Source of the DNA: Octopus bimaculoides
Lineage: Eukaryota
Direction: 5' to 3'
NCBI RefSeq assembly: GCF_001194135.2
Contig: NC_069001.1
Location: 34,991,709-35,055,708, forward strand
DNA: 64,000 nucleotides
The position numbers and the translations under genes are program-made. Of the stretch, positions 50,336-50,486 are shown one piece after another (within the stretch, counting starts at the first letter, position 1; every line of letters begins with the position of its first letter). The notes beneath the pieces were generated by a model. It was given only the letters and a program-made list of their open reading frames with translations. It was not told the origin of the DNA and did not search any database.

Positions 50336-50486
50336 TTGACTTTGATTTAATATCTAATTATGATTTCATGGATTATATAATGATTTCTTTTTGTTCTTTT
50401 TTGCAGGTAAGTCCATCCAACATTTGCATTAGTTCTTGAAACAATTCGAAAATCTGTCATCTTTGAACATCTTATATCAGGTATGT
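50336..50486 (+). promoter_or_regulatory. Candidate recursive splice site (ratchet point) with a 74-nt cryptic RS-exon
   Basis: 69-nt AG-free zone, CTAAT branch-like motif (50354-50358), 18/19-pyrimidine tract, GCAG|GTAAGT junction (50406/50407), second donor CAG|GTATGT at 50481. Confidence 0.6.

What the first reader, a model, noticed from the sequence alone, without database searches (positions are those of the whole stretch)
50336..50486. Textbook recursive-splicing ratchet point with a poison RS-exon in an exon-poor region
Seen: a 69-nt AG-exclusion zone, CTAAT branch-like motif and TTTCTTTTTGTTCTTTTTTGCAG followed immediately by GTAAGT, so a strong 3' splice site regenerates a perfect 5' splice site. 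A second donor CAG|GTATGT 74 nt later defines an exon that is not a multiple of 3 and has a stop in all three frames. Established: this AG|GT junction plus short cryptic exon is the architecture of recursive sites in long Drosophila introns and long human neural genes. Inference: stepwise removal of a very long + strand intron; I know of no description of recursive splicing in cephalopods. The host gene is not visible in this window.
Basis: partly seen in the sequence, partly recalled or inferred. Interest (0 to 1): 0.85.

Follow-up and report, generated by a model that had tools for sequence, protein, structure and literature searches.

The report
Candidate recursive splice site in octopus
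A very strong intron-end signal sits directly against a perfect intron-start signal, followed by a short stop-filled pseudo-exon, in exon-free octopus DNA; this looks like a fly-type recursive splice site, but nothing here shows the strand is transcribed or the site is used.

Summary
TTTCTTTTTGTTCTTTTTTGCAG|GTAAGT lies at 50406|50407. It follows a 69-nt AG-free zone and a CTAAT branch motif. A 74-nt segment with stops in all three frames ends at CAG|GTATGT (50481).

It is the only AGGTAAGT in the window. It ranks second of 6394 acceptors and second of 7617 donors, and tops 1214 AG|GT sites in 203 kb of Octopus DNA. By chance, about 0.006 such sites are expected per window. That still means about 250 per 2.7-Gb genome, or about 9 with the downstream donor.

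Every sequence-level criterion of a Drosophila-type ratchet point is met. The defining functional criteria could not be tested: sense-strand transcription inside a long intron, junction, saw-tooth or lariat reads, and conservation. No host exon, orthologous sequence or RNA data could be reached.

The window is Octopus. I found no paper on recursive splicing in cephalopods or other lophotrochozoans.

My estimates are about 0.4 for a real recursive site, 0.33 for a chance motif, 0.15 for an ordinary non-coding or poison exon, and 0.05 for a plain donor of a SINE-derived exon. This is a good, cheaply testable candidate and a new member of a known kind, not a demonstrated finding.

The parts
50336..50404 (+). 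AG-exclusion zone (69 nt) upstream of the acceptor
   Evidence: The last AG is at 50334-50335. Only 4.2% of AG-AG gaps in the window are 71 nt or longer.
50354..50358 (+). CTAAT branch-point-like motif, with branch A at 50357, 49 nt from the acceptor G. An alternative is TTCAT at 50365-50369, with A at 50368, 38 nt away.
   Evidence: YTNAY scan. Human RS sites show branch-motif enrichment 20-50 nt upstream. Actual use as a branch point was not tested.
50384..50402 (+). Polypyrimidine tract TTTCTTTTTGTTCTTTTTT. 18 of the 20 bases before CAG are pyrimidines, and TT occupies -5/-6.
   Evidence: TT at -5/-6 is found in 196 of 197 Drosophila ratchet points.
50404..50412 (+). Ratchet-point core CAG|GTAAGT, with the junction between 50406 and 50407. 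It could act first as a 3' splice site and then supply the 5' splice site.
   Evidence: It is the only AGGTAAGT in the window. It ranks #2 of 6394 acceptors and #2 of 7617 donors. At 23.3 bits it is the top of 1214 AGGT sites in 203 kb of Octopus DNA.
50407..50480 (+). Putative cryptic RS-exon: 74 nt, a frameshifting length, with stops in all three frames
   Evidence: Translation. It is the best-scoring exon-like acceptor/donor pair in the window. No repeat copy of it exists in the window.
50481..50486 (+). Downstream 5' splice site CAG|GTATGT, which would define the RS-exon. It is weaker than GTAAGT.
   Evidence: It scores 9.9 bits and ranks 16th of 7617 donors. Over +1..+6 it scores 5.9 bits against 8.7 for GTAAGT. 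Most fly RS sites have a 5' splice site less than 100 nt downstream.
49901..50293 (+). Context: a tRNA-like SINE copy in + orientation with a (TAT/TTA)n tail, ending about 110 nt upstream of the site. Its AG at 50155-50156 forms an acceptor-like site.
   Evidence: There are many copies in the window on both strands. In the alignment, the other copies have GG where this copy has AG. TRF finds the tail.
50535..50807 (.). Context: diverged direct repeats of about 90 nt immediately downstream. They carry weak extra donor-like sites.
   Evidence: Self-BLAST shows 71-75% identity between units. TRF does not call them. Alternative donors at 50568, 50658 and 50686 appear.

Best explanation
This is an intronic recursive splice site (ratchet point) with a cryptic RS-exon, on the + strand of a very long octopus intron.

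Proposed mechanism, all of it inferred:
1. U2AF and U2 recognise the branch point (A at 50357 or 50368), the long T-rich tract and CAG (50404-50406). U1 binds CAG|GTATGT at 50481.
2. Together these define a 74-nt exon.
3. The upstream host exon is spliced to 50407. That removes the 5' part of the intron and recreates a consensus 5' splice site: the last three bases of the upstream exon followed by GTAAGT.
4. GTAAGT is a stronger donor than GTATGT, so the regenerated site is used next.
5. The 74-nt exon and the rest of the intron are removed together, leaving no trace in the mRNA.
6. If the regenerated donor failed, the 74-nt exon would be included. It shifts the frame and carries stops in every frame, so within a coding region the transcript would be an NMD target.

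Shown here: the sequence elements, their strength and their rarity. Not shown here: every step of use.
For: All sequence-level features of the published architecture are present:
- (Y)nNCAG|GTAAGT.
- TT at -5/-6, as in 196 of 197 fly ratchet points.
- A CTRAY branch motif 49 nt upstream, with a second candidate at 38 nt. This falls within the 20-50 nt enrichment zone of human RS sites.
- A second 5' splice site 74 nt downstream; most fly sites have one within 100 nt.
- An RS-exon that is short, out of frame and full of stops.
- A regenerated donor stronger than the RS-exon donor, which is the rule for exon skipping.

Rarity:
- It is the only AGGTAAGT in the window.
- The #2 acceptor and the #2 donor coincide at one nucleotide.
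- At 23.3 bits it stands against a maximum of 18.0 among the other 1213 AGGT sites in 203 kb of Octopus DNA.
- 0.02 are expected in that sample, or about 0.006 per window.

Context:
- The site lies in about 250 nt of DNA that is unique within the window, not inside a repeat copy.
- The region is exon-free as far as homology can tell, as expected for a long intron.
- Unique DNA of the window is T>A on the + strand (+0.024). This has the same sign as the sense strand of 6 of 7 O. vulgaris gene pieces. The hint is weak.

Base rate:
Against: - There is no evidence that the + strand is transcribed or that the site lies in an intron. No host exon was found, and an exon-free 64 kb fits intergenic DNA equally well.
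- The GC skew does not support + sense (-0.009).
- No conservation data could be obtained.
- About 250 equally strong AG|GT sites are expected by chance in a 2.7-Gb genome, and about 9 with the downstream donor.
- In vertebrates, whose genomes resemble octopus in size and repeat load, the motif shows almost no sense-strand enrichment (1.0-1.5x). Only about 10 efficient intronic sites are known there.
- Of 36,870 conserved human motif sites, only 342 had junction-read support in three cell lines.
- No second strong ratchet-like site exists on the + strand in the 64 kb.
- The downstream donor CAG|GTATGT is itself strong, so exon inclusion is a real alternative.
- The PWMs are generic metazoan matrices written from memory, not octopus-trained.
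Confidence: 0.4

Rival explanations
1. This is a chance juxtaposition with no function. A T-rich tract, CAG, GTAAGT and a later GTATGT happen to co-occur in DNA that is intergenic, antisense to a gene, or simply ignored by the spliceosome.
For: - About 93 sites per Gb score at least as well by chance, which is about 250 per 2.7-Gb genome and about 9 with a comparable downstream donor (independent estimate).
- T-rich tracts are common in this AT-rich genome. 3.7% of 20-mers have at least 16 pyrimidines.
- The tract lies only about 110 nt downstream of a SINE (TTA)n tail.
- No host gene is visible.
- Only about a quarter of strand-specific positions in a large animal genome are sense-strand intron. 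That follows from a genic fraction of about 50%.
- The extra features (AG-free zone, branch motif, second donor) were picked after the fact.
Against: - The expectation per window is only about 0.006.
- The null is well calibrated at lower thresholds: 6 sites at or above 15 bits were observed against 5.3 expected. The site is therefore a true outlier.
- Chance does not explain why five independent splice features line up at canonical spacings.
Confidence: 0.33
2. 50407-50480 is an ordinary or alternative exon of a + strand transcript that merely begins with GTAAGT. It could be a 5'UTR or lncRNA exon, a regulated poison (NMD) cassette, an 'expressed RS-exon' kept in by the exon junction complex, or a decoy exon.
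For: - It is the best exon-like acceptor/donor pair in the window.
- Its own donor CAG|GTATGT is strong (9.9 bits, rank 16 of 7617).
- In human, about 6400 annotated exons, mostly constitutive, regenerate a 5' splice site and are nevertheless included.
- Stops in all frames are compatible with a UTR, lncRNA or poison exon.
Against: - A perfect GTAAGT at the first six exon bases is expected in only about 1 in 1000 exons by composition (my estimate).
- The donor-competition rule predicts skipping when the regenerated donor is the stronger one, as it is here.
- No protein or annotated model covers it. That is uninformative for non-coding exons.
Confidence: 0.15
3. CAG|GTAAGT acts only as a 5' splice site. 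It would end a SINE-derived exon 50157-50406 whose acceptor, TTTCATATTTTCAG|G, arose by a point change in this SINE copy.
For: - The pair 50157-50406 scores 24.45 bits, almost as high as 50407-50480 at 25.96.
- In the alignment, the other SINE copies have GG where this copy has AG at 50155-50156, so the acceptor is a copy-specific gain.
- Exonisation of sense-oriented SINEs is well known from Alu elements (my own knowledge).
Against: - It leaves the 18-of-20 pyrimidine tract, the 69-nt AG-free zone and the branch motif immediately before the donor as coincidences.
- The acceptor is weaker (11.7 against 16.0 bits).
- The 250-nt exon would contain a (TTA)n microsatellite.
Confidence: 0.05
4. The signal belongs to the minus strand. 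ACTTACCTG is the 5' end of U1 snRNA, so this could be a U1 pseudogene. Alternatively, it could fall within the 137-175 aa minus-strand ORF at 50347-50874.
For: The reverse complement reads ACTTACCTG. A 175-codon open frame spans the site on the minus strand.
Against: - No Rfam family, including U1, matches the window.
- The bases after ACTTACCTG are CAAAAAAG, which is not U1-like (U1 sequence from my own knowledge).
- The ORF has no homolog among 5.8 billion proteins and is not on record. It runs through a tandem repeat.
Confidence: 0.01

Closest known systems
Drosophila intronic ratchet points with cryptic RS-exons (Ubx, kuz, Bx; Hatton 1998, Burnette 2005, Duff 2015, Joseph 2018/2021)
   Same: - The consensus (Y)nNCAG|GTAAGT.
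- TT at -5/-6.
- A short downstream cryptic exon, 74 nt here against about 50 nt in flies, ended by a weaker donor.
- Exon content that is out of frame and full of stops.
- Location in exon-free DNA.
   Different: - The organism is a lophotrochozoan with a genome about 20 times larger and rich in repeats.
- Use, conservation and the host intron are unknown.
- Only one such site occurs in 64 kb.
- The RS-exon donor (CAG|GTATGT) is relatively strong.
Vertebrate recursive sites with RS-exons in long neuronal genes (CADM2; others named in Sibley 2015, gene names from my memory)
   Same: - The exon-definition logic.
- Competition between the regenerated 5' splice site and the RS-exon 5' splice site.
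- RS-exons that carry premature stops, 68% of them.
- A branch point 20-50 nt upstream.
   Different: - Vertebrate sites were defined by junction reads, saw-tooth profiles and conservation. None of these is available here.
- Vertebrates show almost no motif enrichment on the sense strand, so there the motif alone predicts poorly.
Expressed (annotated) RS-exons repressed by the exon junction complex (Blazquez 2018)
   Same: The exon begins with a partial 5' splice site motif that is completed after splicing to the preceding exon.
   Different: Those exons are mostly constitutive and usually coding. This one has stops in every frame and a near-perfect regenerated donor, which favours skipping.
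Poison (NMD) cassette exons, decoy exons, and the 'zero-length exon' of rat tropomyosin (Grellscheid and Smith 2006, cited)
   Same: A short, intronic, frame-disrupting exon with strong splice sites.
   Different: These do not require a 5' splice site motif at the first exon base. They are typically highly conserved and detectably included. Neither property could be tested here.
SINE (Alu-type) exonisation
   Same: A sense-oriented SINE lies immediately upstream. It has a copy-specific AG that creates an acceptor, and a strong donor follows within 250 nt.
   Different: The strongest acceptor, the tract and the branch motif lie outside the SINE, in DNA that is unique within the window.

Membership tests
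Intronic recursive splice site / ratchet point with cryptic RS-exon | Juxtaposed strong 3' and 5' splice sites, (Y)nNCAG|GTAAGT | tested here: met
   TTTCTTTTTGTTCTTTTTTGCAG|GTAAGT lies at 50406|50407. It ranks #2 of 6394 acceptors and #2 of 7617 donors. It is the top of 1214 AGGT sites.
Intronic recursive splice site / ratchet point with cryptic RS-exon | TT at -5/-6 of the acceptor (196 of 197 fly ratchet points) | tested here: met
   Positions 50401-50402 are TT.
Intronic recursive splice site / ratchet point with cryptic RS-exon | A downstream 5' splice site within about 100 nt that defines a short RS-exon | tested here: met
   CAG|GTATGT lies 74 nt downstream, at 9.9 bits and rank 16 of 7617. 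The chance of a donor this strong within 20-300 nt is about 0.036 (my calculation from the ranks).
Intronic recursive splice site / ratchet point with cryptic RS-exon | A regenerated donor stronger than the RS-exon donor, so that the exon is skipped | tested here: met
   GTAAGT scores 8.7 bits and GTATGT 5.9 bits over +1..+6, using a generic PWM. The upstream exon's last three bases are unknown, so this is a sequence-level test only.
Intronic recursive splice site / ratchet point with cryptic RS-exon | RS-exon content that is out of frame or carries stops | tested here: met
   The segment is 74 nt with stops in all three frames.
Intronic recursive splice site / ratchet point with cryptic RS-exon | Location on the sense strand of a long intron of an expressed gene | tested here: inconclusive
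   - No coding exon is recognisable within 44-60.5 kb on either strand, nor among the longest ORFs elsewhere.
- T>A skew is +0.024 on the + strand, matching the sense sign in O. vulgaris genes, but GC skew is neutral.
- AATAAA counts are 73 on + and 68 on -.
- No annotation or RNA data are available.
Intronic recursive splice site / ratchet point with cryptic RS-exon | Splicing intermediates: junction reads into the site, a saw-tooth read profile, lariats | not testable with these tools
   No RNA-seq is accessible. 19 O. bimaculoides RNA-seq libraries exist under PRJNA285380.
Intronic recursive splice site / ratchet point with cryptic RS-exon | Evolutionary conservation of the AG|GT core above its flanks | not testable with these tools
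   - The ORF spanning the site is not on record and has no homologs.
- The concatenated-ORF search found nothing.
- The metagenome 28-mer scan found nothing.
- The O. vulgaris loci that could be fetched are unrelated places in the genome.
Intronic recursive splice site / ratchet point with cryptic RS-exon | Genome-wide sense-over-antisense enrichment of the motif in long introns of this lineage | not testable with these tools
   Only 142 kb of gene-dense O. vulgaris DNA with short introns could be fetched. It held no site at or above 18 bits. The sample is too small to detect enrichment.
Poison (NMD) cassette exon | Included in a fraction of mature transcripts, lies within the coding region, and introduces a premature stop | not testable with these tools
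   Only the stop and frameshift property is shown. Inclusion and position relative to a CDS are unknown.
SINE-derived (exonised) exon | Acceptor and exon body contributed by a sense-oriented SINE, with a donor downstream | tested here: inconclusive
   The acceptor at 50156|50157 scores 11.7 bits. It arose from a copy-specific AG where the other aligned copies have GG. The donor is CAG|GTAAGT. Use is unknown.
U1 snRNA gene or pseudogene (minus strand) | A match to the U1 covariance model beyond the 9-nt 5' end | tested here: not met
   There are no Rfam matches in the window.

The most novel reading that the evidence does not exclude
Octopus removes its very long introns by Drosophila-type recursive splicing at ratchet points with cryptic RS-exons, and 50406|50407 is one such site. 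That would be the first recursive splice site described in a cephalopod or any lophotrochozoan. Together with flies, sea urchin (motif enrichment only) and vertebrates, it would argue that RS-exon-mediated recursive splicing is ancestral to Bilateria. It would also show that the mechanism persists in a large, repeat-rich genome.
Probability: 0.35. Interest if true: 0.5.

Novelty: new member of a known kind. Interest (0 to 1): 0.3.

Why it matters
Recursive splicing has been shown experimentally in insects and vertebrates. Outside them, only motif enrichment has been reported, in sea urchin.

Cephalopods combine an invertebrate lineage with a vertebrate-sized, repeat-rich genome and, from my own knowledge, long neural genes. 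They therefore sit where the two known regimes diverge. Flies have many efficient intronic ratchet points. Vertebrates have few, with little motif enrichment.

One confirmed octopus site, and especially a genome-wide sense/antisense count, would show which regime holds for octopus and whether genome size or lineage decides it.

A single unverified motif does not establish this. Its value is as a precise, cheaply testable locus.

Tried and rejected
1. Comparative data for the site.
- An exact look-up of the minus-strand ORF spanning it found nothing on record.
- A homology search with the 175-aa version found no hits.
- A 4806-aa concatenate of all non-repeat ORFs near the site found no hit at E <= 1e-3.
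- An exact 28-mer scan of JGI metagenomes found 0 matches.
- So no ortholog or allele could be aligned.

2. Finding the host gene.
- ORF lists contain only simple-repeat or TE-like frames.
- Pfam on eight TE-like ORFs gave nothing significant.

3. Non-coding RNA. There are no Rfam families and no tRNAs in the window. A U1 pseudogene on the minus strand is rejected.

4. Repeat origin of the motif. Self-BLAST shows 50287-50530 is unique in the window, so it is not part of the adjacent SINE or of the downstream repeats of about 90 nt.

5. Strand of transcription from composition. T>A skew favours + weakly, GC skew is neutral, AATAAA counts are symmetric, and SINE copies lie in both orientations. 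This is inconclusive.

6. Sense/antisense enrichment in octopus. The seven O. vulgaris loci that could be fetched are gene-dense with short introns. They served only as a null sample.

7. The first Markov simulation (20 Mb) gave counts too small for the strict motif. The semi-empirical convolution replaced it.

Full report
WHAT IS THERE

- On the + strand, the last AG before the site is at 50334-50335. The following 69 nt (50336-50404) contain no AG.
- CTAAT lies at 50354-50358, with the candidate branch A at 50357, 49 nt upstream of the acceptor. A second YTNAY match, TTCAT, has its A at 50368, 38 nt upstream.
- ATTTCTTTTTGTTCTTTTTTGCAG ends at 50406. Of the 20 bases before CAG, 18 are pyrimidines, and TT occupies -5/-6.
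- GTAAGT follows at once (50407-50412).
- Seventy-four bases later comes CAG|GTATGT, with GT at 50481.
- The segment 50407-50480 is 74 nt long and has a stop codon in each + strand frame.

IS IT MORE THAN CHANCE?

Within this window, yes.
- It is the only AGGTAAGT on either strand.
- A looser pattern with up to two mismatches is expected 0.03 times per window in dinucleotide-preserving shuffles. Three of 100 shuffles had a match.
- I scored sites with generic metazoan splice-site matrices. They were written from memory and used only for ranking. The same nucleotide is the second-best of 6394 AG acceptors and the second-best of 7617 GT donors in the window.
- 50407-50480 is the best-scoring exon-like acceptor/donor pair on either strand.
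- The combined acceptor-plus-donor score is 23.3 bits, against 18.0 for the next of the window's 315 AGGT sites.

As an independent sample of real octopus DNA, I fetched seven 20-kb loci of Octopus vulgaris.
- Their 898 AGGT sites reach at most 16.8 bits.
- I convolved the empirical acceptor and donor score distributions of all 406 kb-strand. This predicts 5.3 sites at or above 15 bits (6 observed) and 1.1 at or above 18 bits (2 observed), so the null is well calibrated.
- The same null predicts 0.02 sites at or above 23.3 bits in the sample. That is about 0.006 per window and about 93 per Gb.
- A Markov-3 simulation combined with the observed tract frequency gives about 85 per Gb.

Genome-wide the picture is different.
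- An octopus genome of about 2.7 Gb (size from my own knowledge) should hold roughly 250 equally good AG|GT sites by chance.
- Requiring a donor as strong as GTATGT within 20-300 nt (probability about 0.036) leaves about 9.
- The AG-free zone (4% of AG-AG gaps) and the branch motif lower this further. Those features were chosen after the fact, so I do not multiply them in.

SURROUNDINGS

The window is Octopus.
- A repeat-borne ORF (3907-4449, minus strand) matches predicted proteins of O. bimaculoides at 70-93% identity and of O. vulgaris at 50-59%.
- The window has 36% G+C, 5% N gaps and dense microsatellites.

The site lies in about 250 nt that are unique within the window (50287-50530).
- Upstream is a + oriented tRNA-like SINE (49901-50293), which has many copies in the window and a (TTA)n tail.
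- Downstream is a set of diverged direct repeats of about 90 nt (50535-50807).
- So the motif is not carried by a repeat family, as far as 64 kb can show.

No coding exon could be recognised.
- The minus-strand ORF that spans the site has no homolog and is not on record.
- A concatenate of every non-repeat ORF of 36 aa or more between 44 and 60.5 kb on both strands, plus the longest ORFs elsewhere, found nothing at E <= 1e-3. The database of 5.8 billion proteins includes O. bimaculoides and O. vulgaris gene models.
- There are no Rfam families and no tRNAs.

The region is therefore exon-free, which fits a long intron and an intergenic desert equally well.

Evidence on the strand of transcription is weak.
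- Seven O. vulgaris gene pieces show T>A on the sense strand in 6 of 7 cases and G>C in 7 of 7.
- The unique DNA of the window shows T>A on the + strand (+0.024, about 2.8 standard errors by my calculation) but no G>C skew (-0.009).
- Poly(A)-signal counts are symmetric, and SINE copies lie in both orientations.

COMPARISON WITH WHAT IS KNOWN

The published definition of an intronic ratchet point is (Y)nNCAG|GTAAGT. The site compares as follows:
- 196 of 197 Drosophila ratchet points have TT at -5/-6. This site does too.
- They are followed by a short cryptic RS-exon of about 50 nt. It is poorly conserved, generally out of frame, and ended by a donor that loses the competition with the regenerated donor.
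- Most fly sites have a second 5' splice site less than 100 nt downstream. The same exon-definition mechanism holds in vertebrates.
- In human, branch motifs are enriched 20-50 nt upstream, and 68% of RS-exons carry a premature stop.

Every one of these sequence-level criteria is met here. That includes donor strength: GTAAGT scores 8.7 bits and GTATGT 5.9 bits over +1..+6.

The criteria that actually define a recursive site could not be tested with the tools at hand:
- position on the sense strand of a long intron;
- junction, saw-tooth and lariat reads;
- conservation of the core.

HOW LIKELY IS IT REAL?

The answer depends on a number nobody has measured: whether octopus enriches such motifs on the sense strand of long introns.
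- Shepard et al. found 4-fold to more than 20-fold enrichment in all five invertebrates tested: fly, mosquito, bee, beetle and sea urchin.
- They found 0.9-1.5-fold in eight vertebrates. The background was about 0.1 site per 100 kb on the complementary strand everywhere. No mollusc was included.
- About half of a large animal genome is genic, so roughly a quarter of strand-specific positions are sense intron.
- With that fraction, 8-fold enrichment gives about 64% probability that a motif hit is a selected site. An enrichment of 1.5-fold gives about 11%.
- The extra RS-exon features raise both figures. The lack of any evidence for + strand transcription, and the vertebrate-like size and repeat load of the octopus genome, pull the other way.
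- In human, only 342 of 36,870 conserved motif sites had junction support in three cell lines.

My estimates are:
- 0.40 for a functional recursive site;
- 0.33 for a chance, unused motif;
- 0.15 for an ordinary non-coding, alternative or poison exon that merely starts with GTAAGT, including an 'expressed RS-exon' of the kind kept in by the exon junction complex;
- 0.05 for a plain donor closing a SINE-derived exon 50157-50406. Its acceptor arose by a copy-specific AG where the other aligned copies have GG;
- about 0.01 for any minus-strand reading.

MECHANISM, IF REAL (INFERRED)

1. The 74-nt exon is defined by U2AF and U2 at the tract and branch point, and by U1 at 50481.
2. The upstream host exon is joined to 50407.
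3. The junction recreates a consensus donor (NNN|GTAAGT) that outcompetes GTATGT.
4. The RS-exon is removed together with the downstream intron segment.
5. 'Poison' applies only if the intron interrupts a coding region. In that case, failure of the second step would add 74 nt with stops in all frames.

NOVELTY

I found no paper in the library that links recursive splicing with cephalopods, octopus, squid, molluscs or lophotrochozoans. The two co-occurrences are incidental: for cephalopods the terms appear only in the reference list, and the one squid hit is a review of single-cell technologies.

If confirmed, this would be a new member of a known kind in a new phylum, not a new mechanism. Motif enrichment is already documented in several invertebrates, so a specialist would find the motif expected rather than startling.

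The finding is a sound, precisely located and cheaply testable candidate. It is not yet evidence of recursive splicing.

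Noticed in passing
window 49901-50293 (+); also 11796-12210 (+), 25176-25690 (-), 62365-62711 (-), 33924-34073 (-), 63723-63959 (-), 29316-29416 (+): An abundant SINE family of about 300 nt is present in both orientations. It has a B-box-like GAGTTCAAATTCC (50112-50124) and a (TTA/TAT)n tail. Neither ARAGORN nor Rfam recognises it.
   Followed up: partly
window 1061-1516 (-), 3907-4449 (-), 18381-18513, 31784-31972, 49141-49279, 51639-51830 (+): A second repeat family has an open frame containing LQLDALPNANHSESVVGAFTCH. 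It matches 'proteins' annotated in O. bimaculoides, including a C2H2 model and a WD40 model, and in O. vulgaris. This suggests that some octopus gene models include repeat-derived sequence. It has no Pfam domain.
   Followed up: partly
L001-L007 (O. vulgaris GCA_951406725.2): In 6 of 7 loci, the repeat-derived 'Hypothetical predicted protein' (103-137 aa) lies a few hundred to about 3,700 bases downstream of a gene on the same strand (280-3,724 nt). In five of the six the upstream gene has a Pfam domain: RWD, Pkinase, Rrp44/RNB, Cpn60/TCP1 or Chromo. In L004 it has none. In four loci the gap is 1.1 to 3.7 kb, which is longer than a typical 3'UTR. The pattern looks like ORFs called in 3'UTRs or downstream repeats, not real genes.
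   Followed up: no
window 51789-52427 (-), 57026-57202 (-), 52862-53213 (-): Minus-strand ORF fragments resemble the C-terminal part of LINE reverse transcriptases (…MLHGSETW…; …KGRLYEACVRTAMLHG…), and one has a zinc-finger-like CxxC…H…H stretch. The resemblance is from memory only. Pfam gave no significant hit. An N gap (about 51.85-52.27 kb) interrupts one of them.
   Followed up: partly
window 38124-38481 (-): A frameshifted fragment resembles a Tc1/mariner transposase (…YVWQQDSAP…). The resemblance is from memory, and Pfam found no hit.
   Followed up: partly
window 34154 (-) and 923 (+): These are the next-best AG|GT sites. The first is TTGCTTTTTTTTTTTTTTAG|GTGGGA (18.0 bits) on the minus strand. 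The second is a (CT)n-borne CAG|GTATCC (17.7 bits). Both look like by-products of homopolymer or microsatellite tracts.
   Followed up: no
L001-L007 gene ranges; window unique DNA: O. vulgaris gene pieces show sense-strand T>A (6 of 7, mean about +0.03) and G>C (7 of 7, mean about +0.02) skews. Octopus thus seems to have the transcription-associated strand asymmetry known from mammals. It could be used genome-wide to infer the strand of unannotated transcription units.
   Followed up: partly
window 50535-50807: Three diverged direct repeats of about 90 nt (71-75% identity) contain CATGTAGGGCTACATT. TRF does not detect them. A 175-codon minus-strand frame is open through them but has no homologs.
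   Followed up: partly
window, whole: 5.3% of the window is N gaps (3423 N), in many blocks, often next to microsatellites. Examples are about 13.3-13.7, 43.4-43.9, 51.85-52.27 and 56.4-56.85 kb. This is a draft-quality scaffold, so distances across the window are approximate.
   Followed up: no
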